Positions 1-47,666 of a stretch of DNA of 64,000 nt are shown here, one piece after another. Position 1 is the stretch's first letter; the number at the start of each line of letters is the position of its first letter. Below the pieces are notes generated by a model. That model searched no databases. It saw only the letters and a program-made list of their open reading frames with translations, and had not been told where the DNA came from. Source of the stretch: Bugula neritina (Eukaryota; Animalia; Bryozoa); the NCBI GenBank assembly GCA_964035545.1, contig OZ037772.1:4468233-4532232 (forward strand), given 5' to 3'. Position numbers and translations under genes: made by a program.

Positions 1-761
1 TATTAGACACATGGATGTAGAAGTAAACTTAGATTATAGAGTGTAGTGTGGATAAATATTATATGATTTAAAATAAAAAGTTACAGATATACATTTACTG
101 TAACTATTGGAAAACAAGAAAACAGTTCAAAAAGCTGTTCACAAACTGCTAGAAATTGTTATTTTCTGTTCTCTTCGGTAGCAGTTGCTCACTGCTCGCT
201 ACAGATTCCAGGTCGTTGAAGACGATGTGGGTTGTAACTGTGATCCCATTATCTCAATCAAATTCTTTCTAGGACATTTACAATATATTTTTATAATCAT
301 GTACTTTTTTGTATATAATACTGTTTTTTATGGTTTTATTTCCATTACTGATACTTCCCTACCTTTGTTGGAGTTATCAGAAAGTGGACTTTCTGCTGGA
401 GAGGGGGTGATAGTTGGTGAAAGTATACCCCCCAGTACCTCATGCTAAACATAACTATATACCTATAGATTATAGTGCCACGCATATCTATTTTGAACTT
501 CGCTATAACTCCGCAATGACACCGCCGGAACCCTGTCTCACCCAATAAGGATATACTCTGTGTATATATAAACGATGCCTTCAGGCGCCCAGCCCAGTCT
601 TGACATTAGTAACTAGACAATCTAGGTTAACTATGTTGTAAATCATGCGTATATATTTTGCTTTACTAAATATAGTGGTGGATTTTGGAGGTTGCTTTTT
701 ATATGTTATATTCAGTCTTGTGTGCTTCATTCAGTCTCGTACAGAGTGTGAGAAATAATTT

Positions 762-834
762 TGCTCCCACTGGGAATCGAACCCGAGTCCTTTGGCTTGC
801 AAGCAAGTGTGCTAACCATTACACCACGGAGGCC
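762..834 (-). mobile_element. tRNA-derived SINE head or tRNA pseudogene (anticodon loop reads CT-TGC-AA, Ala-like)
   Basis: The reverse complement has an A box (TGGTGTAATGG) and a B box (GGTTCGATTCC), but the acceptor and anticodon stems pair poorly. Related copies lie at ~993-1083 and ~34947-35020. Confidence 0.7.
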
Positions 835-1083: not shown

Positions 1084-1903
1084 TACTATATGTAATACTT
1101 TATGATTGTGTTCGTTTTTCGTTTATATTGTGATTTGTTCTATGGTATGTGATGATTTATAATACAGTTCTTCATCAAAGGATCAGCTAGTTCGGTTACT
1201 TCCATAACCTCTCAAGAAGATATGCAGTAAACACCAGCGCACAATAATACACTAATCAGTAGTGCACAAAACTACAACAATATTGTATCAATTGTTTTCC
1301 CAGTTGTACTAAGAGGGTTTACAAATCTTGTATATCGTTTGATAAGTTGAATTTCAACATGACAATGTGAATAATTATAACTCAGGAAACCTGAAGCATG
1401 GTCCAGAATTACCTCAAAAATAATATAATCTATGAATCATCATAACATAAGTGCAGCTCAGAAAAGCTATTCTCTGGTACTTGCTTTATTCTCCAGTAAT
1501 CCAACATTACCATTGCTTGAACAAAAAATAATTTACATTTCAGCAGTGACATAGACTTCAAGCAAATGATGACAATGTTCATATATATTCTGATTATTAT
1601 TGTTCCTATGGTAACCAGAAGAACCTCAATATACATTAGATCATTCTATAGTATAGATTTATTAAGAGAACAACTCCCAAATAACAGAAATATATACATA
1701 ACTTTATATTGCTGTACATGCAGAGCAACAAGAAATAAGAATGCCTGAAGTCTGTTGTATGTATCGACTAGTAACTACTGAATTAAAAATAGAGCTCAAT
1801 GGAGAAAAGTAAGAATTAAAAATCTTATAATTATTATTATACAATATCTCAAACATTATATATAAAAATAAATGAGATTAGAATAAAACAAGCCTATCCG
1901 AGA

Positions 1904-9800: not shown

Positions 9801-12800
9801 GGTCAGTGTTATTATATAATTTCTATAGAAAAGGAGACAGAATCTACCATCAGTTGAGGAAAGTGGGCGGGTCTTATGACTGGGACAGAACTACGTTTAC
9901 TATGGATGAGGTGAGGAGTTATCCTCTCTATACATATATTATGTTTGAGTAGTGGCGTCTATATGCCGTGTCGGCTGTTTACTGACTCAGTGTGTTATCC
10001 TCTCTATGATTGGTTAATCATATGGCCTTGTTTCCAATCAGTTCACACTTGACACATGACTCATATATACTTTTTTATTAGAAATCTGTGAAAGCGGTGA
10101 ACGAAGCGTTTATCAGAATGCACGAGAAAGGTGTGATCTACAGAGCTAACCGACTCGTCAACTGGTCCTGTACTCTCAACTCTGCCATCTCTGATATTGA
10201 GGTATATCGTACAGTATCAGTCTAACTTCCGGCTGTGTGTACGTCAACTGTTTATTCACTGCGAGACTTGTGTGTTGGTGGTAACTAACCTAATAGTAGT
10301 ATTCAGACACAGCCTGATATATTACATTATGACTATCTTCGAATGAATACGAATGGATCTGCGGTTGTGGTTTAGTTCGATTGACTTGCTCCCAAACATC
10401 CAATAAAAATGTATTGTGATGTGAAGCAATCACTATGTTTCTAAGCTTTTGTGTTATGTGAAAGGATTTCTCATTCAATGTTTGGGAACAGTTACATCAA
10501 TGAGACCACAGCCACAAATTCATTCGTACGAGCATCCATTTCTTTCACACAATGTGAACTAGTGGAAAAGAATGAGAACGCAGTGACTCGGAGGCGCACA
10601 CTACAGTTTAACCTTTGACCTGAATAGTCTGAGAGAGTTGTATCACTGATTGCAGGTAGACAAAGTAGAGTTGACAGGAAGGACTATGCTCTCTGTGCCG
10701 GGCTACAAGGAGAAGGTGGAGTTCGGAGTTCTTGTTTCCTTTGCATATAAAGTAGAAGACTCTGACGAAGAGATCATTGTGGCCACAACTAGATTAGAAA
10801 CTATGTTGGGTTAGCAGACATCAATGTCACTAATAGCTTTGTTGCTTAGCAACGTAATTATGGCTGACTTTTGCTGCCAGTTGAAATAACTCCAGTAGAT
10901 CTCTCTAACTATTCTCACTTTCTCACTTAGGAGCAGTAGTGGAGAACTTGAGATAGCCTAAGTTCTTTAATTTTATTATTGCATTTTAGTTTAAGGTGCG
11001 GGTAGAAGTTTTCAAAGTCTGCTATTAGGTACGATCTATGACGCTACATTGGACATGTATATCCAATGAATTAACGCAAAAGTTTTTCTGTCCAATAGGA
11101 GTCCGCCGCAACTTATTTGAATCAAGCAGTGCTTGATCCTACCGTACCGCAACACCGTACAGGAAGCTCAGACATTTGTAAAAATGGCTGATATTTGCTG
11201 TTACGGCGTACGATACGGTAAGTGTGAATAGGGGGTTAGTGGTTAATTAGCCTAGGACCACACTGTGCGTATTTTCGCATGCGAAAATTAAAATCACAAG
11301 TACCAAAGGTGTCCACTGTAGCGTCAGTGATGCGTGATAAATAAAGCTTTCATTTTTAAATCGCACTCGCTTTCAATTAAACGCAATTTACTGGAATGTA
11401 GCACTAAATAAAGAAATTGGGCTCGCTGAATAACTACCAGCCAATTAGGTGACGACGACAGAGACGATTCGCACTTGCGTTGAAAATGCAGAGCGACAAG
11501 TGTGAATGTTTTCTCAACGCGCACAGTAGGCACCTTTGCTACTTGTGATTTCAATTTTCGCATGCGAAAATACGCACCGTGTGGCCCTAGGCTTAGCTTG
11601 GTACTAACTTACTGAGAGTTGTGTACTGTGAGTAGAGTAACTGTAAAGTTAGATCTGGTAAACACTTGGTAAATATTTAATTGTATATCAATACTCAATA
11701 CTGTGAGAGACTATAAAGTCTGGTAACTATTGTAGGTGACACTGCCGTGGCTGTTCACCCTGAAGATGGCCGATACAAACACTTACACGGGAAATTCGTG
11801 AGACATCCTTTCGCTGACAGGAGAATACCTATTGTGGCTGACGACTTTGTGGAGATGGAGTTTGGGACAGGTGCTCTGTTTCCTGTATATTCATAGCCTG
11901 TTGTCCTGTATATTCATAGCCCGTTGTCCTGTATATTCGTAGCCTGTTGTCTTGTATATTCGTAGCCTGTTGTCCTGTATATTCATAGCCTGTTGTCCTG
12001 TATATTCATAGCCTGTTGTCCTGTATATTCATAGCCTGTTGTCCTGTATATTCATAGCCTGTTGTCCTGTATATTTATAGCCTGTTGTCCTGTATATTCA
12101 TAGCCTGTTGCCCTGTATATTCATAGCCCGTTGTCCTGTATATTCATAACCTGCTGTTCTGTATATTCATAGCCTGTTTTCCTGTATATTCATAGCCTGT
12201 TCTGTATATTCATAGCCTGTTGTCCTGTATATTCATAGCCTTCAAAGACAATTAACTATCATTTCATTTAATTTGTTTCATTTAGGGCAATGCTCCCTCC
12301 ATATCTTATGTTTCTAGTTCTCACGAAATACCGCAGGTCATGAGAATGGCTTGGTCCTTTGTTTTGTGGCTTGTGTTATGTGTATTGGGACAAATTAGTT
12401 TAATTTAACAGATCCGTGTGTTAAATATGGTATTCTACTATGGTAAGATTTCTACTATGTCATGAATTGAGGTGTCAGGTCCCTCAGCTTACTGAGATAC
12501 GGAGGGAGAACTAAATTGGAGTCTATTCGTATAGCAACGAGTACTGTTTGTAATATTCATAGCCTCAGAGCTTCTCACTTCCCATCTAATTGTTGATAGG
12601 GGCGGTGAAGATAACCCCCTCACATGATCCCAAGGATTACGACGTTGGCCTCAGACACAAACTCCCCTTCCTCACAATCATTGACGATGACGGGTTAATA
12701 TGTGGAGACTCCGGCGAGTTTGTGGGAATGAAAAGGTGTGTGAATCTAGTATTCTGTGTTTCTGACAATGAGGTGGCATAACTCGTAATAGTGTAACATA

Positions 12801-14237
12801 TTTCGAAGTTGATGACACAACTCTCAGGATGGTTATTCCATACATTATAGGGGCTATTTTACTTTTCAGTACACACTGAAAGTATCCAAATTTTACCTAT
12901 TTCTCACATTTTAGCTGCTTTTGCCCAAAAACTAATAAAATACAACTAAATAATAAAGGTGATTTTTAATTTTGCCTAATTTCCTGTGTTTTTCCTAATT
13001 ATGTGGCTAATTTGGATTTTTAGACTGTCTTTTTTTCGTGACAAGCTGCAAATTCAAATTAACTATACCAATAGGAAAAAACATAGGAAATCAAGCAAAA
13101 TTAAAAAGAACCTTTTTTATTCAGTTGTATTTTTTAAATTTTTATTAGTTTAGAGCAAAAACTACAAGGTCTTATTTTTCTATTTTCGCTGTTTTATAAT
13201 TAGTCAACTTAATAGCAAAAAACTATTGATCTACATAGGTTTTAGTGGTTCAATACCCTTAGTGTACAGGTGACAAGTGTGTACAGGTGACATGTGTAAG
13301 CATGTGACATGTGTGAGTAGTTGACATGTGTGAGCAAGTGACATGTGTGAGAATGTGGCAGGTGTAAGCAGGTGACATGTGTGAGCAGGTGACATGTGTG
13401 AGCAGTTGACAGGTGTGAGCAGGCGACTTGTGAGAGCATGTGACAGGTGTGAGCAGGTGACATGTGTGAGAATGTGGCAGGTGTGGGTTGATTAGCAATT
13501 TATACTCCATGTAAGTTTCATGTGCAGGTTTGATGCCCGTAAAGCTGTCCAGAAAAGGTTGGAAGAAATGGGGCTATACAAAGGAAAGGAAGACAACCCT
13601 ATGGTAGTTCCTGTATGTAGGTGAGTCGTCTTCTCTCTACAATCCTATCCCAACTTGATAGATTTCTACAGGTTCTACAGGTTTAACTGCTAATGTGTAT
13701 AGTTTCTTACATTAAAATGATGAATTAGCAGCTAAACTGTGAACAATAGCTAAAAGCTAGAGGTATATAGCTCTGTGTAATAATTTAAATAAAGTGACTC
13801 ATAGTTACAGATCTCGATGTAATAAAAGTTTTCCTCTCTTGTTCTCCTAATTAACGCCTTCATTAACATATCCATTATATTTTACAATTCTGTTCAGTTG
13901 AACTGTTACTATGTGAGTCTGTCTGTTAACAATGACCTCCACACCGTGGTCTCTTGTGTTATAGTCGATCTAAAGATATCATTGAGCCGATACCCAAACC
14001 ACAGTGGTATGTGGCGTGTGACGATATGGCAGCCAAGGCTGTAGAGGTACTTGTATTATATATTGTGTATAGTATATAGTATATTAGTACTGTATAGTAT
14101 ATGTATTAGTACTGTATAGTATATATATATTAGGACTGTATAGTATATATATTAGTACTGTGTATAGTATATAATATATTAGTACTGTATAGTATATATA
14201 TTAGTACTGTATAGTATATATATTAGTACTGTGTATA

Positions 14238-14306
<69 letters not shown>

Positions 14307-14433
14307 AATCTGTGGACAGCAGCTGTTTCGGGATTTGTCCCCTCATCAGCACAGAACAGAGTACCATGGCCCACACCTTCGCAATAGTAAAACTTATAGT
14401 TTTACTAAAGCATATTTAAAAGGTGTGTAAACT

Positions 14434-14515
<82 letters not shown>

Positions 14516-14562
14516 GATATATATATATATATAGATATATATATATAGATATATATATATAT

Positions 14563-14595
<33 letters not shown>

Positions 14596-17500
14596 TATAG
14601 ATATATATATATATATATAGTACTGTATAGTATATCTATAGTATAGTATATCTATAGCATAGTATATCTATAGTATAGTATATCTATAGTATAGTATATC
14701 TATAGCATAGTATATCTATAGTATAATATATCTATAGCATAGTATATCTATAGTATAGTATATCTATAGCATAGTATGTATACTGCAGGTAGTAGAATCA
14801 GGCAAGCTAAAGATCATACCAGACTATCACAAAGTCACTTGGTACAAATGGCTGAGGAACTCCAGGGACTGGTGTATCTCCAGACAGCTATGGTGGGGGC
14901 ACAGAATACCAGCCTACTTTGTGCAGATCCAGGGGCAACCTAAGGCTGAGGTATGACTCATTCTCTATCCTGTCTTATGTTATTTACAGAAAGCAAGCGG
15001 GTTTAGCACAGACCTAATATTTACCACAGACTATGTTTATGTTGATAAACTATGAATTCCCTTTAATGTGGCCCTTTCTGGAATGGGTGTGGCCCTTTCT
15101 GGAGTGGGTGTGGCCCTTTCTGGAGTGGGTGTGACCCTTTCTGGAGTGGGTGTGACCCTTTCTGGAGTGGGTGTGGCCCTTTCTGGAGTGGGTGTGGCCC
15201 TTTCTGGAGTGGGTGTGGACCTTTCTGGAGTGGGTGTGGTCCTTTCTGGAGTGGGTGTGGCCCTTTCTATAGTGGGTGTGGCCCTTTCTGGAGTGGGTGT
15301 GGCCCTTTCTGGAGTGGGTGTGGACCTTTCTGGAGTGGGTGTGGACCTTTCTGGAGTGGGTGTGGACCATTCTGGAGTGGGTGTGGCCCTTTCTATAGTG
15401 GGTGTGGCCCTTTCTCTAGTGGGTGTGGCCCTTTCTGGAGTGGGTGTGGCCCTTTCTGGAGTGGGTGTGGCCCTTTCTGGAGTGGGTGTGGCCCTTTCTG
15501 GAGTGGGTGTGGCCCTTTCTTTAGTGGGTGTGGCCCTTTCTATAGTGGGTGTGGCCCTTTCTGGAGTGAATATGCCTCTTTCTGGAGTGGGTGTGGCCCT
15601 TTCTGGAGTGAATATGCCTCTTTCTGGAGTGGGTGTAGCCCTTTCTAGAGTGGGTATGGCCCTTTTTAAAGTGAATATGGCCCTTTGCAGAATAACTGCC
15701 CAGTAAAAGTGCATTTTTTCTCAGATTGAATGCCCAAAACTTGATGCACATTTTTTTACCAACTTCAACTTGAAATTTGTCCAGCATTTATTGATTTGTC
15801 GTTCAATTTTTTAATATTTTATTATCATTTAAGTTGTGTTTTGCCTCTTGACCTCTATATATTTTTCATAGTCTAGTGACAACAATTACTGGGTGACTGG
15901 CAGATCCTATGAAGAAGCGCTGTCAAAGGCAGCAATGAAGTTTAACGTACATCCAGATGTCATCAGTCTTAGCCAGGGTAAGTCTATTCCATCTGACAGC
16001 TCAAGTATATGTTGAGTAGATATTGAGTATGTATTGGGTATATATTGATAATTTATTTTCTTTTGTTCACGGACTAGACATTTCCTTTGAGTAAATTAAC
16101 CCCAGTTTCAGTTTGTCAGAGAAGACAACTCTGAACATTGTTCCATTTCCTGCCTGTTATACAGATGAGGATGTGCTGGACACTTGGTTTAGTTCTGGAA
16201 TATTCCCTTTCTCAACTATGGGGTGGCCAGATAACACCCCCGACCTGCAAGCCTACTACCCGGGTACTCTGCTAGAGACTGGACTGGATATCCTCTTCTT
16301 CTGGGTGGCCCGCATGGTCATGATGGGACAATTCCTACTCGGGGAGCTTCCCTTCAAAGAGGTACGTCTGATGGTAGAAAGTGTCTTTTGCTTCTTCTGA
16401 TGTCTGTGGTTACCATTCTATATCTATACCCTTTAGATGACTCTATTCTATATACTTATTCTATATCTATACCCTTTAGATGACTCTGTTTAATTAACTT
16501 ATTCTATATCTATACCCTTTAGATGATTCTCTTCAATTAACTTATTCTATGTCTATACCCTTTAGATGACTCTATTCTATTAACTTATTCTATATCTATA
16601 TTCTTTAGATGACTCTATTATATTAACTTATTCTATATCTATACCCTTTAGATGATTCTATTCAGTTAGCTGATAACTTTATAGTTTTTTTTCGATTTAG
16701 AGTAACGCTGCTATTATTGGTGAAACAATCTCTTGTATAACCAATGAATGTGAAATGTGCTGTTTGACAGTCATGGGACTGAAGATCAAATGCAGTTGTG
16801 TCTAAATTGATAAACTTAAACTAAATGGCAAGAGGTTTTAATGGCTGTATGTGTATGCAAGATTATATACTTGTATATAATAACAGAGTAGCAAAATTTA
16901 ACTGATTTAAAGCTGGACTTGAGTTAAAGCAGCTGTCCTACTATGTCACTAATTGTGGGGTTTTTGGCGCCTCGCTTATTGAGATATGCAATGAGCACAG
17001 TGCACCTGTGTGTGTGACCCGGTGACCTTTGTATGACCTCGTGACCTTTGTATGACCTCTTTCCCCACACTTCCAGGTGTTCCTGCACGCCATGGTGAGA
17101 GATGCACACGGCAGGAAGATGTCCAAGTCACTCGGCAACGTCATTGACCCTCTGGATGTGGTGAACGGCATCTCCCTCGAAGATCTCAATAAGACTTTAG
17201 ATAATGGTAACCTTGACCCCAAGGAGGTGGCTAAGGCTAAACAGGGACAGGTTGGTGTGATATGTAATATAATTGATTATTGATTATATGTTGATTATTC
17301 CATCATCAGTTATATTGCGTAATTTATAAAATCTTTACACTTTTCAAATCATAGTTATATGGGATGTATGATGTATAGGAATTGTCTCATCATTTTGATT
17401 TATCTATGGAAAAGTCAATTACAGTTTTCAATCAAATAGTAATATATGTGTGTTAATAGGAATATTAGTATCTCCTATCAGTCTATTCAGTCTAATTAGC

Positions 17501-20500
17501 CTGTGATCTAACTGATACATTCTCATTTTTTTGAAACAGAAAGAAGACTACCCTCAGGGTATCCCTGAGTGTGGAACAGATGCTCTCAGGTTTGCTCTCT
17601 GTGCTTACACTGGCAAAGGTAGAAGTATTAACCTAGGTGAGTCTACACTCTGTACTCTACACTCTACTCTACCCTCTATTCTACTGTATCCTCTACTCCA
17701 CTCTACTCTACCCTCTACTCTACCCTCTACTCTACTCTACTCTACTCTACTCTACCCTCTACTCTATACTCTACTCTACCCACTACTCTACTCTACTCTA
17801 TACTCTACTCTACTGTATCCTCTACTCCACTCTACTCTACCCTCTACTCTATACTCTACTCTATACTCTACTCTACTCTATACTCTACTCTACTGTATCC
17901 TCTACTCTATCCTCTACTCTACTCTACCCTCTACTCTACTCTATCCTCTGCTCTACTCTACCTTCTACTCTACCCTCTACTCTACCCTCTACCCTTTACT
18001 CTACCCTCTACTCTATCTTCTACTCTACCCCCTACTCTACCCTCTACTCTACCCTCTACCCTCTACTCACATACTCTATATTCTCATGTGTTTGCTCTTA
18101 CAGATGTATTGAGAGTCCAAGGGTATCGGTTCTTCTGCAATAAGCTGTGGAATGCGACTAAGTTCGCTCTCGGAGCCCTCGGGGAAGGCTACACTCCCCC
18201 TCCCTCTCAGAAGGTACTTAGACTATGTTTCTATAAACTCTAGCTGGTCTCTCCATACACTCGGCCATCTACTTCTGAGTCACTGCTTTGCCTTACACCA
18301 GCCCTCTGTAACTAATGGCCTCGTGTGGTCTGTGTCCCCCCCCCCCTTGACTGTATAGAAGAAACTCACCGGGTTTATATTCACCACCCATGTGATAACT
18401 CTGATAAAATGCGCTTTTTGTTGAATCTGGCTAAGAATTTATTCATCTGTGTGGGGCACAGGAGCAATTGTGATTGGATGTTCTTTATAACAGCACCAAT
18501 GCTCTCTACTTGGGTTTGAACCTATGACCTCACGTCAGCCAAGCCATCACTTTACCCCCTAGACCCATACTGCTGCCCATCTCCAATGCTATATGCCATG
18601 TGTTATGATTTAATAGTTTCTCAATGCTATACAGTGATAGCTGTGTTGATTGCTGCGTTGCTATGTACACCTGTTGCTATGGTTACAGTTGCAATGCGTG
18701 TACCTGTTGCTATGGTTACAGTTGCTGGGCACAGAGTCCCTCCTCGACCAATGGATATTGAGTCGTCTCTCGGAGGCCGTGGTGTCGTGTAATCGGGGAT
18801 TCTTAGACTACGACTTTCCCGTGGCCACCACCGCCTGCTACAACTTCTGGTTGTACGACCTCTGTGATATTTATCTGGTAAGTGTGGTACTGTGTAGGGA
18901 CATGTGTCTGGTAAGTGTGGTGCTGTATAGGGGCATGTGTCTAGTAAGTGTGATACTGTATAGGGACATTTATCTGGTAAGTGTGGTGCTGTGTTGGTAC
19001 ATGTGTCTGGTAAGTGTGATACTGTGTTGGCACATGGCAGAGTTTTATTTAGGCTTGTCTCCACCTTTTCAATAAATAGAACTTCTGCTTTTCATAGGAA
19101 GGAATAAAGCCTGTGATATATAGTACAGATGAGGAAGCTAAGGCTGTGACCAGAGCCACCCTCTACACGTGTCTAGATTCTGGGCTACGTTTGATTCACC
19201 CTTTCATGCCTTTCGTCTCTGAGGAGTTGTTCCAACGACTTCCGCGGCGTGACGACGTCTCTCCTCCCAGTTTATGTGTCACGTCCTACCCTACCCTCTC
19301 TCAGGTGAGTGAATATACCCTACCCTCTCTCAGGTGAGTGAATATACCCTACCCTCTCTCAGGTGATTTATCAAAGTTGTCTCCCTCTGATTTGTAATAT
19401 TATTCGGCATCCATATAACTTTTGCATGGATTTTGATATCCTCTCCTGGATTGGTTTCATGTATTGAGATGGGATAACTCCAAATTACCTGACATTATTA
19501 TTGCCTTTTAGTTTGGTGACTTGAGGCAGACAGAGTTGGAGAATGACTTGACCAGCGTGTACGAGTGTATCAAGACTGTCAGGTCTATGAAAGCTACTTA
19601 CCAACTTCCTAGTAAAACTAAAGTCGAGAGTAAGTATTGTATAGTGTAATAGTATTATATAGTGTAATAGTATTGTATAGTGTAATAGTATTGTATAGTG
19701 TAATAGTATTATATAGTGTAATAGTATTGTATAGTGTAATAGTATTATATAGTGTAATAGTATTATATAGTGTAATAGTATTATATAGTGTAATAGTATT
19801 GTATAGTGTAATAGTATTATATAGTGTAATAGTATTGTATAGTGTAATAGTATTATATAGTGTAATAGTATTATATAGTGTAATAGTATTGTATAGTGTA
19901 ATAGTATTGTATAGTGTAATAGTATTGTATAGTGTAATAGTATTATATAGTGTAATAGTATTGTATAGTGTAATAGTATTGTATAGTGTAATAGTATTGT
20001 ATAGTGTAATAGTATTGTATAGTGTAATAGTATTATATAGTGTAATAGTATTATATAGTGTAATAGTATTATATAGTGTAATAGTATTGTATAGTGTAAT
20101 AGTATTATATAGTGTAATAGTATTATATAGTGTAATAGTATTATATAGTGTAATAGTATTATATAGTGTAATAGTATTGTACAGTGTAATAGTATTATAT
20201 AGTGTAATAGTATTATATAGTGTAATAGTATTGTATAGTGTAATAGTATTGTATAGTGTAATAGTATTGTATAGTGTAATAGTATTATATAGTGTAATAG
20301 TATTGTATAGTGTAATAGTATTGTACAGTGTAATAGTATTGTATAGTGTAATAGTATTATATAGTGTAATAGTATTATATAGTGTAATAGTATTGTACAG
20401 TGTAATAGTATTATATAGTGTAATAGTATTATATAGTGTAATAGTATTGTATAGTGTAATAGTATTGTATAGTGTAATAGTATTATATAGTGTAATAGTA

Positions 20501-22870
20501 TTATATAGTGTAATAGTATTATATAGTGTAATAGTATTATATAGTGTAATAGTATTATATAGTGTAATAGTATTGTATAGTGTAATAGTATTATATAGTG
20601 TAATAGTATTATATAGTGTAATAGTATTGTATAGTGTAATAGTATTGTATAGTGTAATAGTATTGTACAGTGTAATAGTATTGTATAGTGTAATAGTATT
20701 ATATAGTGTAATAGTATTATATAGTGTAATAGTATTGTACAGTGTAATAGTATTATATAGTGTAATAGTATTATATAGTGTAATAGTATTGTATAGTGTA
20801 ATAGTATTGTATAGTGTAATAGTATTATATAGTGTAATAGTATTATATAGTGTAATAGTATTATATAGTGTAATAGTATTATATAGTGTAATAGTATTAT
20901 ATAGTGTAATAGTATTGTATAGTGTAATAGTATTATATAGTGTAATAGTATTATATAGTGTAATAGTATTGTATAGTGTAATAGTATTGTATAGTGTAAT
21001 AGTATTGTACAGTGTAATAGTATTGTATAGTGTAATAGTATTATATATTATGTAACATTGTTGTTCCCCTCCAGTCTGGTTCAGATGTCACGACGTCGTG
21101 TCCTCGCAGCGTCTCCACAAGTTCCGGCAGCTCATACAACTCATGTGTAACGCTGCCGCTCTCACAATCCTCCAGACGGATGACGTTCCGTCAGGCTGCG
21201 CTGTCAACACCGTCGGCTTTGGGGTGGAGGCTCACCTCATGTTGAAGGTGATTGCTCTACTCTGTACTGTGACTCAGTCACATGACTAGTGGTCACATGA
21301 GTCTTAGTCACATTAGTATTCGTCACTTGATTTCCATCACATGACTTCTGGCTTCATGACTGATGGTCACATGACTTGTTGCATCGTCCTCTACATAATT
21401 TCACTATTATTGTTGTTACCCTGACTAACCAACTGTTGACACTTTGCCCATATAAGGAGTGTGACATACTCATATACACACACGTACTATTAGTCATACT
21501 ATGAGTCATAGTATGAGTCATTCTCTCTCCTCTGTGCAGGGAATGATAGACCTGGATAAGGAACTCAGTCAGTTGGCGCAGAAGTTGAAGCAGATCTCTG
21601 AGAAGAGAGACAAGCTGGAGGAATCCACGAGGAAACCTGACTACGTAACCAAAGTTCCTGAGGGTGTGAGAGCAGACAACTCTCAGAAGGTGAGTTTTAC
21701 AGTGTACCACCTTCCAGTACCAGCTACCTTGTACCACCTTCTAGTACCAGCTACCTTGTACCACCTTCTAGTACCAGCTACCTTGTACCACCTTCTAGTA
21801 CCAGATACCTTGTACCACCTTCTAGTACCAGCTACCTTGTACCACCTTATAGTACCAGCTACCTTGTACCACCTTCTAGTACCAGCTACCTTGTACCACC
21901 TTCCAGTACCAGCTACCTTGTACCAGCTACTTTGTACCACCTTCTAGTACCAGCTACCTTGTACCAGCTACTTTGTACCACCTTCTAGTACCAGCTACCA
22001 TGTACCACCTTCTAGTACCAGCTACCTTGTACCACCTTCTACTACTAGCTACTTTGTACCACCTTCTAGTACCAGCTACCATGTACCACCTTCTAGTACC
22101 AGCTACCTTGTACCACCTTCTACTACCAGCTACCTTGTACCAGCTTCTAGTACCAGCTACCTTGTACCACCTTCTAGTACCAGCTACCTTGTACCAGCTT
22201 CTAGTACCAGCTATCTTGTACCAGCTACCTTGTACCACCTTCTAGTACCAGCTACCTTGTACCACCTTCTAGTACCACCTTCTTGTACCACTTTCTAGTA
22301 CCAGCTACCTTGTACAATTCATCTCTCCATATATATTTTCCTGTATTATCAACGTAATCGAGATGTTGTACTATAGCATTGTTACTATACAAGCTTTCAG
22401 AGAACGGTTTCAACAAAATAGCGTATGTTTCATGTGTATGGGTCGTACACATGAAACATCAAGTAATACAAGTAACAATGTCTTTTGCATCCATTATTAT
22501 GATACTGCTTGGATTTGAAAACATCTCAACTGATGAAATTATCTCGTATCTTTAATGATAATGTCGGGAGGGTGGGGCTAGTTGAACCAAACATTGCGAT
22601 TTTGAGCACAAGTTTTGAAGAATTGTTTAGCCAACACAAAGACGAGCACCATGAAGTTCAGCCATATGTATATACTGCCTTCACCCTCTGCGTACTACTC
22701 AGCTATCTAACATGTTCTCTACACAGTATAGCATATAACTCATACACCACAGTCCGATACTTCTCACATCTTCTCTCTGTCTCCAACAGGTGGAAGACCT
22801 TAGCAAGGAGTCCTCCAGGCTACAAGAAGCCATACAGAAGTTGGAGAAGATGAAGCTGGATGACATCTGA
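6801..22870 (+). CDS. VARS1: Valine--tRNA ligase, cytosolic type, ~1052 aa, 24 coding exons
   Basis: Exons: 6801-6953, 7340-7412, 8431-8538, 8840-8966, 9387-9551, 9829-9910, 10082-10201, 10656-10809, 11736-11870, 12600-12735, 13528-13620, 13965-14046, 14789-14950, 15872-15977, 16165-16361, 17077-17250, 17540-17636, 18104-18213, 18722-18877, 19098-19304, 19512-19629, 21075-21247, 21540-21689, 22790-22870. All introns are GT-AG and phases are consistent (3159 nt). Motifs: [14 protein letters not shown] (HIGH), [39 protein letters not shown]. The N-terminus is Lys-rich with no GST-like domain. Confidence 0.97.
8214..8396 (-). mobile_element. tRNA-headed SINE, family B (~200 bp)
   Basis: Homologous to copies at 18361, 36128, 45728 and 46008. 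The shared consensus includes GCTGTGGTCTAGGGGTTA, GAAGAGCATCCAGTCATAATTGCTCCTGTGCC and GTCCTTAGCCCG. Confidence 0.8.
8630..8850. repeat. 30-bp minisatellite (60-bp dimer) that includes the ValRS exon 4 acceptor
   Basis: Unit ATTGGTTGCTTTGTAACAG|GTAGAGATGTG; CAG and CGG copies alternate. Confidence 0.95.
9245..9386. repeat. 35-bp minisatellite abutting the ValRS exon 5 acceptor
   Basis: Unit TCTGCAGGTGTCTGATATGCTTGCGTTGTCAGGTG, about 3.5 copies. Confidence 0.9.
11250..11592. mobile_element. PIF/Harbinger-type (Tourist-like) MITE
   Basis: ~60-bp TIRs (GCCTAGG.CCACAC.GTGCGTATTTTCGCATGCGAAAATT...) with a TTA target-site duplication (TSD) on both sides. A second, inverted copy lies at 40359-40690. 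Confidence 0.9.
11876..12240. repeat. 23-bp minisatellite directly after the ValRS exon 9 donor
   Basis: Unit CCTGTTGTCCTGTATATTCATAG. Confidence 0.95.
12920..13160. repeat. AT-rich imperfect inverted repeat (old MITE-like)
   Basis: Left arm ...AAACTAATAAAATACAACT...TTTTTAATTTTGCCTAATTTCCTGTGTTTTTCCTA pairs with right arm TAGGAAAAACATAGGAAATCAAGCAAAATTAAAAA...AGTTGTATTT...TTTTATTAGTTT. Confidence 0.65.
13262..13485. repeat. ~17-bp minisatellite
   Basis: Unit CAGGTGACATGTGTGAG, degenerate copies. Confidence 0.9.
14065..14780. repeat. compound AT-rich repeats: ~22-bp unit, two (TA)n tracts and a 15-bp unit, interrupted by a 133-bp unique island
   Basis: TATTAGTACTGTATAGTATATA units; (TA)n at 14239-14303 and ~14437-14620; TAGTATATCTATAG(C/T)A units. 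Confidence 0.9.
14309..14355 (-). ncRNA. minimal type I hammerhead ribozyme
   Basis: The minus strand reads TCTGTG-CTGATGA-GGGG-ACAAA-TCCC-GAA-ACAG-CTG-CTGT-C^CACAGA. It has a perfect 6-bp stem I, intact CUGAUGA and GAAA core, a 4-bp stem II, a short stem III and a GUC cleavage triplet (cut between 14315 and 14314). Confidence 0.85.
15065..15687. repeat. 21-bp minisatellite
   Basis: Unit GTGGCCCTTTCTGGAGTGGGT, about 29 copies. Confidence 0.95.
16414..16662. repeat. ~43-bp minisatellite
   Basis: Unit TTATTCTATATCTATACCCTTTAGATGACTCTATTCTATTAAC, about 6 copies. Confidence 0.9.
17640..18075. repeat. pyrimidine-rich (CTCTA/CCCTCTA)n degenerate repeat filling ValRS intron 17
   Basis: Visible directly; starts immediately after the GTGAGT donor. 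Confidence 0.9.
18361..18576 (-). mobile_element. SINE family B, diverged copy
   Basis: GGGGCACAGGAGCAATTGTGATTGGATG...GGGTTTGAACCTATGACCTC...CCCCTAGACC matches the other copies. Confidence 0.75.
18872..19035. repeat. 33-bp minisatellite duplicating the ValRS exon 19 donor
   Basis: Unit GTAAGTGTGGTACTGTGTAGGGACATGTGTCTG, 5 copies. Confidence 0.92.
19289..19366. repeat. 29-bp repeat duplicating the ValRS exon 20 donor
   Basis: CCCTACCCTCTCTCAG|GTGAGTGAATATA, about 2.7 copies. Confidence 0.92.
19630..21048. repeat. 18-bp minisatellite filling ValRS intron 21
   Basis: Unit GTAATAGTATT(A/G)TATAGT, about 79 copies, running from the donor to near the acceptor. Confidence 0.98.
21703..22315. repeat. 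27-bp minisatellite after the ValRS exon 23 donor
   Basis: Unit TGTACCACCTTCTAGTACCAGCTACCT. Confidence 0.95.

Positions 22871-24563: not shown

Positions 24564-47666
<23,103 letters not shown>

What the first reader, a model, noticed from the sequence alone, without database searches (positions are those of the whole stretch)
14304..14436. Intact hammerhead ribozyme in a 133-bp island between (TA)n tracts inside a ValRS intron
Seen: the minus strand gives a complete type I hammerhead. Stem I is UCUGUG/CACAGA, extendable by CUC/GAG across a small internal loop. It is followed by CUGAUGA, stem II GGGG/UCCC with an ACAAA loop, GAAA, stem III ACAG/CUGU around a 3-nt loop, and a GUC cleavage site. 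Stem III contains the palindrome CAGCUG, and the island sits inside (TA)n. Known: minimal hammerheads with a very short, palindromic stem III are typical of Penelope-like retroelement terminal repeats and of non-autonomous retrozymes, and often cleave as dimers. Inference: this is a solo terminal repeat or monomer of a (TA)n-targeting, ribozyme-bearing retroelement family. Its antisense orientation would spare the essential ValRS pre-mRNA.
Basis: partly seen in the sequence, partly recalled or inferred. Interest (0 to 1): 0.8.

Follow-up and report, generated by a model that had tools for sequence, protein, structure and literature searches.

The report
Truncated hammerhead retrozyme copy in (TA)n
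The 133-bp island is a real, intact hammerhead ribozyme, but it is only the 3' half of a 271-nt non-coding "retrozyme" retroelement that has recently spread to about 570 places in this genome, nearly always into (TA)n repeats; this is a new member of a kind already described in animals.

Summary
The minus strand at 14304-14361 holds a complete type I hammerhead (HHR) that cuts between 14315 and 14314. A descriptor scan finds exactly this one in the window and none in 200 shuffles. No Rfam model reaches its cut-off (best 19.1 bits).

The island is not a whole element. It is the 3' 133-137 nt of a 271-nt unit. That unit occurs as 5'-truncated copies, exact monomers and seamless tandem arrays of up to 4 units.
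- **Copy number:** the HHR core occurs 199 times exactly and 569 times with up to 3 mismatches.
- **Insertion ends:** of 64 sampled insertions, 62 end at one point, 12-14 nt past the cleavage site (...GAGAUAU).
- **Flanks:** 59 of 64 are followed by (TA)n. 5' ends scatter, with a peak at one exact unit.

This is the signature of target-primed reverse transcription on a circular or multimeric RNA. The unit is non-coding, 43% GC and highly structured. It is present in RNA libraries.

The genome also holds hundreds of recently active Hydra-clade Penelope-like elements (PLEs). They carry their own HHRs and also end in (TA)n, so they are the likely mobilisers.

Verdict: a 5'-truncated, dead-on-arrival copy of a metazoan non-LTR retrozyme. 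Self-cleavage, circularity and the partner are inferred. Two first-reader notes from this scan flag similar tandem HHRs elsewhere in this genome.

The parts
14300..14436 (-). 5'-truncated retrozyme copy: unit positions 149-270 plus 0-14 of a 271-nt unit. The last ATAT (14303-14300) cannot be told apart from the (TA)n flank.
   Evidence: 100% identical over 133 nt to at least 30 other copies. Aligned to the 271-nt array unit of L029.
14304..14361 (-). Complete type I hammerhead ribozyme: distal helix, internal loop, stems I-III and the catalytic core.
   Evidence: only descriptor hit in the window; 0 of 200 shuffles. One search gives sub-threshold matches to hammerhead models.
14343..14349 (-). 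CUGAUGA box (C3-A9).
   Evidence: U7, the one free core position, is the only core position seen to vary among copies.
14326..14329 (-). GAAA box (G12, A13, A14, A15.1).
14314..14315 (-). Predicted self-cleavage site: after C17 (14315) and before C1.1 (14314).
   Evidence: Follows from the position of GUC in the motif. Cleavage itself was not tested.
14316..14326 (-). Stem III ACAG/CUGU with a CUG loop. It contains the palindrome CAGCUG, which could form a 10-bp intermolecular helix III in a double hammerhead.
   Evidence: Cofolding two copies of this segment gives -15.5 kcal/mol.
14163..14303 (.). (TA)n tract joined to the element's 3' end; the target microsatellite.
   Evidence: 59 of 64 sampled insertions have (TA)n at this junction.
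14437..14640 (.). TA-rich microsatellite joined to the element's truncated 5' end.
   Evidence: 44 of 64 sampled insertions have (TA)n at this junction.
12590..12781 (+). ORF that holds an upstream ValRS exon (valS profile positions about 263-314). The exon's own bounds were not set.
16113..16400 (+). ORF that holds a downstream ValRS exon (valS profile positions about 435-521). The exon's own bounds were not set.

Best explanation
The island is a dead-on-arrival, 5'-truncated insertion of a 271-nt non-coding retroelement of the metazoan non-LTR retrozyme kind.

Likely life cycle:
1. Tandem genomic arrays are transcribed.
2. The type I hammerhead in each unit cuts after GUC and releases 271-nt monomers.
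3. A host RNA ligase closes the monomers into highly structured circles.
4. A Penelope-like element's GIY-YIG endonuclease nicks a (TA)n microsatellite.
5. The freed TA-repeat 3' end anneals to the AUAU that lies 11-14 nt downstream of the cleavage site.
6. The PLE reverse transcriptase copies the circle or multimer from there.

Stopping early gives 5'-truncated copies such as this one. Joining again at AUAU after one turn gives exact monomers. Further turns give seamless multimers.

What is shown: the motif, the family, the junction pattern, the (TA)n target, RNA presence, and the co-resident (TA)n-targeting Hydra-clade PLEs with hammerheads.

What is inferred: self-cleavage, circularisation, which reverse transcriptase does the work, and microhomology priming.

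The window copy has one ribozyme and no partner site, so it cannot release a monomer. It has no evident role for ValRS.
For: **Motif.** It is complete and is not a chance match.

**Family size.** There are 199 exact cores and 569 with up to 3 mismatches, against 0 for the reversed-pattern control. At least 31 copies are 100% identical over all 133 nt.

**Tandem arrays.** The 271-bp period is seamless; the L029 array has 3.1 units at 100% identity.

**Junctions in 64 insertions at 60 sites chosen only by the core.**
- 62 have their 3' end at unit position 12-14.
- 59 are followed by (TA)n and 44 are preceded by it.
- 18 have their 5' end at position 8-15 (p = 3e-13 against a uniform spread).
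- 37 are truncated, 14 are unit length and 13 are longer.
- Median identity is 98.6%.

**Variants inside the ribozyme keep it intact.**
- Stem I C-G becomes U-G.
- Stem II G-U becomes G-C, and G-C becomes G-U.
- U7 becomes G or C, and C17 becomes A.
- There are also loop changes.

**A divergent copy.** L088 is 78% identical overall but keeps about 75 nt around the ribozyme unchanged.

**Three HHR families.** Families A, B and C in this genome share the core but differ in every helix. 7 of 10 predicted pairs show compensatory changes.

**RNA.** The unit is in an oligo-dT metatranscriptome (X10). In run X1, labelled RNA-Seq, summed word depth averages about 27,000. That is about 3% of the run's letters, against about 0.05% of the genome. 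Contigs in all four runs carry the unit-to-unit joint.

**Unit properties.** It has no ORF over 45 codons and is 43% GC. As a circle it folds to -99.6 kcal/mol with z = -9.7.

**PLEs.** The ORFs in L091, L081 and L007 carry RT motifs, a CxCX5C linker and a GIY-YIG domain without CCHH. That matches the Hydra clade as defined in PMC8557442. The genome gives 927 candidates, many 99-100% identical, with open frames up to 740 aa. These elements carry their own hammerhead followed by a short tail that runs into (TA)n.
Against: - No Rfam hammerhead model reaches its threshold.
- The hammerhead fold of the monomer (-12.7 kcal/mol) is not the minimum-energy fold (-15.6), and stem III is short. A single copy may therefore cleave poorly.
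- All runs are assembled contigs, so no RNA ends, strand or circular junction can be shown. The unit-to-unit joint also exists in tandem DNA.
- The unit has no significant sequence similarity to the 3' regions of the three PLE or HHR families sampled. No autonomous element with this ribozyme was found, so the partner is inferred only from the shared target and architecture.
- The family is so young that identity among its copies says little about selection.
Confidence: 0.85

Rival explanations
1. The 271-nt unit is not a separate non-autonomous family. It is the pseudo-LTR or terminal region of an autonomous Penelope-like element, and the window holds a solo fragment of that element.
For: PLE pseudo-LTRs carry hammerheads and form partial tandems and inverted pairs (PMC8557442). 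Inverted pairs of this unit exist in L071 and L073.
Against: None of the 64 sampled insertions is joined to an ORF. Arrays consist only of seamless 271-nt units. The PLE ORFs nearby are separate insertions with different hammerheads, separated from the unit by (TA)n. There is no similarity to the sampled PLE 3' regions.
Confidence: 0.08
2. It is a satellite or minisatellite that spreads at the DNA level, by unequal exchange, rolling-circle DNA or a Helitron-like mechanism. The hammerhead would be a passenger.
For: Tandem arrays exist. Hammerhead-bearing satellites such as newt satellite 2 were long described this way (PMC7229834).
Against: Copies are dispersed over all large contigs as singletons. 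A constant 3' end with graded 5' truncation is the signature of reverse transcription from the 3' end, not of unequal exchange. No Helitron-type termini were seen. The RNA level is far above the DNA share.
Confidence: 0.04
3. The copy has been taken over by the host, for example to process an antisense transcript or to tune ValRS expression.
For: It is an intact ribozyme inside an essential gene's intron.
Against: It is 100% identical to dozens of copies elsewhere, so it is very recent and there is no sign of locus-specific conservation. The orientation is antisense and no promoter evidence was found.
Confidence: 0.02
4. It is a chance match to the hammerhead consensus.
For: No Rfam model reaches its threshold.
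Against: 0 of 200 shuffles give a hit. There are 569 copies. Variants are structure-compatible, and helices covary between families.
Confidence: 0.01

Closest known systems
Metazoan non-LTR retrozymes (Cervera and de la Pena 2020, NAR, PMC7229834)
   Same: A type I hammerhead in every unit. Short tandem units: 271 bp here, within the published 150-450 bp range. Low GC (43%). No LTR, PBS or PPT and no coding capacity. A highly structured RNA that is abundant in RNA libraries. Co-occurrence with PLEs.
   Different: That paper's text does not mention microsatellite targets (0 occurrences of the word). Here the insertion signature is explicit: a fixed 3' end 12-14 nt past the cleavage site, a (TA)n target, and graded 5' truncation with a peak at one unit. 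Arrays sampled here are short (up to 4 units), and most copies are dispersed singletons. Circularity and cleavage were not shown here.
Hydra-clade Penelope-like elements (Craig et al. 2021, MBE, PMC8557442)
   Same: The same (TA)n target. A hammerhead near the 3' end followed by a short tail. 5'-truncated, tandem and inverted insertions. Such PLEs are abundant and recently active in this genome.
   Different: The 271-nt unit encodes nothing and shows no significant sequence similarity to the PLE 3' regions sampled. Its ribozyme helices differ from those of the PLE families seen here.
Retrozymes as derivatives of PLE pseudo-LTRs (Li, Clavereau and Pollet 2026 preprint, 10.64898/2026.07.22.740005)
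   Same: Co-occurrence of retrozymes and PLEs, and a mix of monomers, dimers and multimers.
   Different: The preprint shows pseudo-LTR homology in Xenopus, where it classified PLEs as Neptune or Poseidon. It found Hydra and Naiad only in a coral. Here homology to a pseudo-LTR was not found, and the candidate partner is a Hydra-clade PLE. The preprint reports depletion from introns; this copy is intronic.
Minimal hammerheads of PLEs, and the satellite hammerheads of newts and Schistosoma
   Same: Type I topology, a short helix III with a palindromic sequence that permits a double-hammerhead dimer, and an internal loop in stem I opposite loop 2.
   Different: Helix III here has 4 bp and a 3-nt loop. 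That is longer than the 1-2 bp of minimal PLE variants, so monomer activity is plausible but untested.

Membership tests
Hammerhead ribozyme, type I | Conserved core: C3 U4 G5 A6 N7 G8 A9, G12 A13 A14, the A15.1-U16.1 pair, and H17 (not G). | tested here: met
   CUGAUGA, GAAA, A-U and C17 are all present. The descriptor gives one hit and 0 of 200 shuffles do.
Hammerhead ribozyme, type I | Three helices around the core, with stem I open. Helices are supported by covariation. | tested here: met
   Stems are 6 (+3), 4 and 4 bp. Variants within the family are wobble or compatible changes. Families A, B and C differ in all helices but share the core, and 7 of 10 predicted pairs are compensatory.
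Hammerhead ribozyme, type I | A match to the curated covariance models (Rfam RF00163 and its relatives) at the gathering score. | tested here: not met
   The best scores are 19.1 bits (RF03152; cut-off 56.3) and 12.8 bits (RF00008; cut-off 48.5). RF00163 gives no hit to this family. This is a database criterion, not a biochemical one.
Hammerhead ribozyme, type I | Self-cleavage after H17. | not testable with these tools
   All available runs are contigs, so no RNA ends can be seen.
Metazoan non-LTR retrozyme | Type I HHR inside short (150-450 bp) head-to-tail repeats, from dimers to multimers. | tested here: met
   The period is 271 bp. Arrays of 2 to 4 units were seen.
Metazoan non-LTR retrozyme | Non-coding, low GC, and no LTR, PBS or PPT. 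| tested here: met
   The longest open frame is 45 codons. GC is 43%. Arrays abut (TA)n directly.
Metazoan non-LTR retrozyme | Expressed as abundant monomer-length circular RNA. | tested here: inconclusive
   The unit is present in an oligo-dT RNA library. It reaches about 3% of the letters of a run labelled RNA-Seq. The unit-to-unit joint is present. Circles cannot be told from tandem transcripts or DNA with contigs.
Metazoan non-LTR retrozyme | A compact, highly base-paired RNA. | tested here: met
   The circular MFE is -99.6 kcal/mol against -56.6 +/- 4.4 for shuffles. 72% of bases are paired.
Metazoan non-LTR retrozyme | Retrotransposed: dispersed copies with the signs of reverse transcription. 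| tested here: met
   Fixed 3' end in 62 of 64 insertions, graded 5' truncation, and 569 dispersed cores.
Hydra-clade PLE (the proposed partner, not the island itself) | A C-terminal GIY-YIG endonuclease without CCHH. A CxCX5C linker. CxxC and CxH motifs near the C-terminus. | tested here: met
   L091 has CNCKQPSHC, and L081 has CNCRKKESC. The GIY-YIG stretch reads VIYQATV...YIGL, with no Cys between the two motifs. L091 also has CNLC and CRH near its C-terminus (compared). Pfam itself is blind to these ORFs. The protein atlas places them with GIY-YIG / RVT_1 / PF26215 clusters.
Hydra-clade PLE (the proposed partner, not the island itself) | Canonical HHR present, insertion into (TA)n, and a short element with a single ORF. 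| tested here: met
   The family B HHR lies 3' of the L081 ORF. In 4 of 5 copies a tail of about 40-47 nt runs into a TA run, which is only about 10 nt long in L034 before (GT)n. Open frames reach 740 aa.
Hydra-clade PLE (the proposed partner, not the island itself) | N-terminal RWK motif, DKT motif, and phylogenetic placement of the RT. | not tested

The most novel reading that the evidence does not exclude
The junction statistics of this very young family may be the clearest genomic footprint yet of how animal retrozymes integrate. On this reading, a Hydra-clade PLE nicks (TA)n. The TA-repeat end primes on an AUAU 11-14 nt past the ribozyme site of a circular 271-nt RNA. Rolling-circle reverse transcription with microhomology-guided 5' joining then gives truncated copies, exact monomers and seamless multimers. 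That would tie retrozymes to a specific PLE clade and target, and it would offer a tractable pair for a retrotransposition assay.
Probability: 0.45. Interest if true: 0.55.

Novelty: new member of a known kind. Interest (0 to 1): 0.4.

Why it matters
Hammerhead retrozymes are the animal counterparts of viroid-like circular RNAs, and how they move is still inferred rather than shown.

This family is unusually young: median identity is 98.6% and dozens of copies are identical. It is also unusually legible, with one 3' end, one target and a clear 5' truncation spectrum. It sits beside many intact Hydra-clade PLEs that share the target.

That makes it a good natural system for testing three things: whether PLE enzymes mobilise retrozymes, whether the template is a circle, and whether sense-oriented ribozymes are purged from introns.

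For the annotation of this window it is an ordinary, probably neutral intronic repeat.

Tried and rejected
- **Rfam.** The gathering threshold on the whole window gave only a tRNA-like hit. The E-value threshold on 301 nt gave only AT-rich noise. On 71 nt it gave sub-threshold hammerhead matches. RF00163 over the genome gave one sub-threshold hit (25.4 bits), which belongs to a different, PLE-linked hammerhead.
- **Thermodynamics alone.** It does not support the ribozyme: z = -0.3 for the 66-nt stretch, and the MFE is a competing fold.
- **Pfam GIY-YIG over the genome.** One hit only, which I did not look at further. Pfam does not see the PLE endonucleases or their homologues.
- **Pfam RVT_1 over the genome.** The list was saturated by elements with intact ORFs of about 930-1100 aa and about 1500 aa. 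I take these for LINE-like and LTR-like elements, but they could not be fetched.
- **Fetching more loci.** Only 60 unbiased sites were analysed, and no full-length PLE was read.
- **Similarity between the unit and PLE 3' regions.** None above shuffles.
- **ORFs at 29.1-31.3 kb.** The long ORFs on both strands have no Pfam hit and overlap a 33-bp tandem repeat.
- **Read laying.** Only contigs were available, so no starts, ends or strand could be read.
- **Not tried.** Orientation bias in introns needs gene annotation. The organism name is coded in the run table.

Full report
**Observation**

On the minus strand of 14304-14361 the sequence reads as a full type I hammerhead:
- A distal CUC/GAG helix and a UGU/UU internal loop.
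- Stem I UCUGUG/CACAGA.
- CUGAUGA.
- Stem II GGGG/UCCC closed by ACAAA.
- GAAA.
- Stem III ACAG/CUGU around CUG.
- C17 at 14315.

It finds none in 200 dinucleotide-preserving shuffles.

(TA)n lies on both sides. The neighbouring + strand ORFs match valine--tRNA ligase models in colinear order. The island is therefore intronic and antisense to ValRS.

The proposed covariance-model test does not pass:
- Nothing reaches the gathering score.
- With 71 nt searched, RAGATH-1-hammerhead reaches 19.1 bits and Hammerhead_3 reaches 12.8 bits.
- RF00163 does not report this family in the genome.

Folding energy alone is also unremarkable. The ribozyme fold is -12.7 kcal/mol against -15.6 for a competing fold.

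**What the island belongs to**

The 133 nt recur in the window's own 216-Mb genome. At least 31 copies are 100% identical over the full length, among 837 candidates. The 35-nt catalytic stretch occurs 199 times exactly and 569 times with up to three mismatches. A reversed-pattern control gives none.

Some copies lie 271 bp apart. L029 holds 3.1 head-to-tail units at 100% identity, embedded in (AT)n. The island is therefore the 3' part of a 271-nt unit, not a unit in itself.

I took 60 sites chosen only by the exact core, so they are unbiased for length, and aligned each to a natural array copy. Positions are counted from the first base after the cleavage site. Among 64 insertions:
- 62 end at position 12-14 (...CACAGAUUGAGAUAU).
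- 59 are followed by (TA)n and 44 are preceded by it.
- 5' ends fall all over the unit, with a sharp peak at position 8-15 (18 of 64, p = 3e-13).
- 37 are shorter than a unit, 14 are one unit long, and 13 are longer (up to 601 bp in this sample; 1084 bp in L005).
- Median identity is 98.6%.

The window copy starts at position 149 and ends at position 14.

A constant 3' end with graded 5' truncation is the mark of reverse transcription primed at the target. Copies that run from AUAU through the cleavage site to the next AUAU cannot come from a cleaved linear monomer. They need a circular or multimeric template.

**Is the ribozyme under constraint?**

Identity within so young a family proves little, so I looked at variants.

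Variants seen in genomic copies and in public contigs at 5% or more:
- Stem I C-G to U-G.
- Stem II G-U to G-C, and G-C to G-U.
- U7 to G or C. This is the one free core position.
- C17 to A, which is still allowed.
- Loop changes.

None disrupts the motif.

One divergent relative, L088, is 78% identical overall with two deletions. It keeps about 75 nt around the ribozyme unchanged and sits in (GT)n.

The fetched loci also hold two other hammerhead families, B and C. They have the same core and entirely different helices. RNAalifold on the three families recovers stems I and II, with compensatory changes in 7 of 10 pairs.

**RNA**

All available runs are assembled contigs, so ends, strand and level cannot be read directly.
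- The unit is present in an oligo-dT metatranscriptome (X10).
- In X1, labelled RNA-Seq with 260 M letters, summed word depth averages about 27,000 across the unit. That is about 3% of the run, against about 0.05% of the genome. This is some 40-fold more than genomic DNA could give at that run size, which points to abundant RNA.
- Contigs in all four runs carry the unit-to-unit joint. That fits circles or tandem transcripts, but also tandem DNA.

The unit has no open frame over 45 codons and is 43% GC. As a circle it folds to -99.6 kcal/mol (z = -9.7, 72% paired). The palindromic helix III can pair between two copies (-15.5 kcal/mol), so a double-hammerhead mode is possible.

**Likely mobiliser**

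Several fetched loci contain ORFs next to the same (TA)n tracts. The ORFs of L091, L081 and L007 show these features:
- RT motifs: YRDD, FLDVT and a thumb with S(D/N)HP.
- A CxCX5C linker.
- A GIY-YIG domain without the CCHH cysteines.
- C-terminal CxxC and CxH motifs.

These are the features that define the Hydra clade of Penelope-like elements. That clade is also described as carrying canonical hammerheads and inserting almost always into (TA)n (PMC8557442).

Pfam does not see these ORFs. The protein atlas places them with GIY-YIG / RVT_1 / PF26215 clusters. A protein search finds 2197 relatives, and the few named ones are cnidarian.

The genome gives 927 candidates, many 99-100% identical, with frames up to 740 aa. 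These elements are therefore recently active.

In L081 the family B hammerhead lies about 260-310 nt 3' of the ORF's end. Its 47-nt tail ends in (TA)n. The same end is seen in L031, L085 and, with a shorter tail and a short TA run, L034. L085 also shows the inverted 5'-truncated pair typical of PLEs.

L022 holds a second PLE type, which matches RVT_1 and has a Penelope/Poseidon-like endonuclease.

The retrozyme shares the target and the layout [hammerhead]-[short tail]-(TA)n with these PLEs. It has no significant sequence similarity to the 3' regions I could read. The partner is therefore inferred, not shown.

**Comparison with the literature**

All tested features fit the metazoan non-LTR retrozymes of Cervera and de la Pena (PMC7229834). 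They also fit the view that these retrozymes depend on PLEs (PMC8557442; 2026 preprint).

What this family adds is a clean insertion signature and a link to the Hydra clade and its (TA)n target. That is incremental, so I file it as a new member of a known kind.

Two first-reader notes from this scan flag tandem hammerheads elsewhere in this genome. One describes a 208-nt unit in (TA)n. The other describes sites 272 nt apart. Neither locus was examined here.

**Verdict**

The copy is a 5'-truncated, probably inert insertion. Its antisense orientation may matter for tolerance in an essential gene, but that was not tested. Cleavage, circularity and the identity of the reverse transcriptase remain to be shown at the bench.

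Noticed in passing
L081:1830-1880 (-), L085:1361-1411 (+) and 1237-1287 (-), L034:1845-1895 (+), L031:1499-1549 (+): A second hammerhead family (B: CUGAGGA core, stem II GUGCC/GGCAU, helix III ACU/AGU). It lies 3' of a Hydra-clade PLE ORF and ends about 40-47 nt after its cleavage site in a TA run. L085 shows a head-to-head inverted pair. The L031 copy is the genome's best RF00163 hit, at 25.4 bits, below the cut-off.
   Followed up: partly
L078:911-965 (+) and 390-442 (-): A third hammerhead family (C: CUGACGA core, 7-bp stem II). It is present as two copies in opposite orientation, each followed by a tail that ends in (TA)n.
   Followed up: no
L091:2207-3325 (-), L081:2140-3033 (-), L007:274-642 (+); genome-wide list: Hydra-clade PLE ORFs invisible to Pfam. 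The genome gives 927 candidates in several sub-families (99-100%, about 50% and about 47% identity to the L091 ORF), with open frames up to 740 aa. The closest named relatives are cnidarian proteins at about 55% identity.
   Followed up: partly
L022:2035-3133 (-): A different PLE type, with a frameshift between the RT part (RVT_1, E 6e-8) and a Penelope/Poseidon-like GIY-YIG part that has cysteines in the core.
   Followed up: no
L088:1325-1548 (+) and L043:1486-1548 (+): Copies of the retrozyme joined to (GT)n rather than (TA)n. L088 is a divergent sub-family, 78% identical with two deletions, but its ribozyme region is unchanged.
   Followed up: partly
L081:1690-1740 (-): A roughly 45-nt fragment of an unidentified element, flanked by (TA)n on both sides. 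It lies in the same tract as a PLE end and a retrozyme copy, which suggests that (TA)n tracts collect repeated insertions.
   Followed up: no
window 762-833 (-): Rfam tRNA match at 38.2 bits (cut-off 29) with several non-standard pairs. ARAGORN reports no tRNA there, so it may be a tRNA-derived repeat or a pseudogene.
   Followed up: partly
window 15037-15714, 17531-18143, 19637-21055, 21683-22245, 29149-31000: The ValRS introns and nearby DNA are full of minisatellites that give long spurious ORFs on both strands. One example is a 33-bp unit repeated 56 times at 29149-31000, which has no Pfam hit.
   Followed up: partly
window 14066-14293: A 22-24-bp tandem repeat (TGTATAGTATATATATATTAGTAC, about 10 copies) directly adjoins and overlaps the (TA)n tract next to the insertion.
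   Followed up: no
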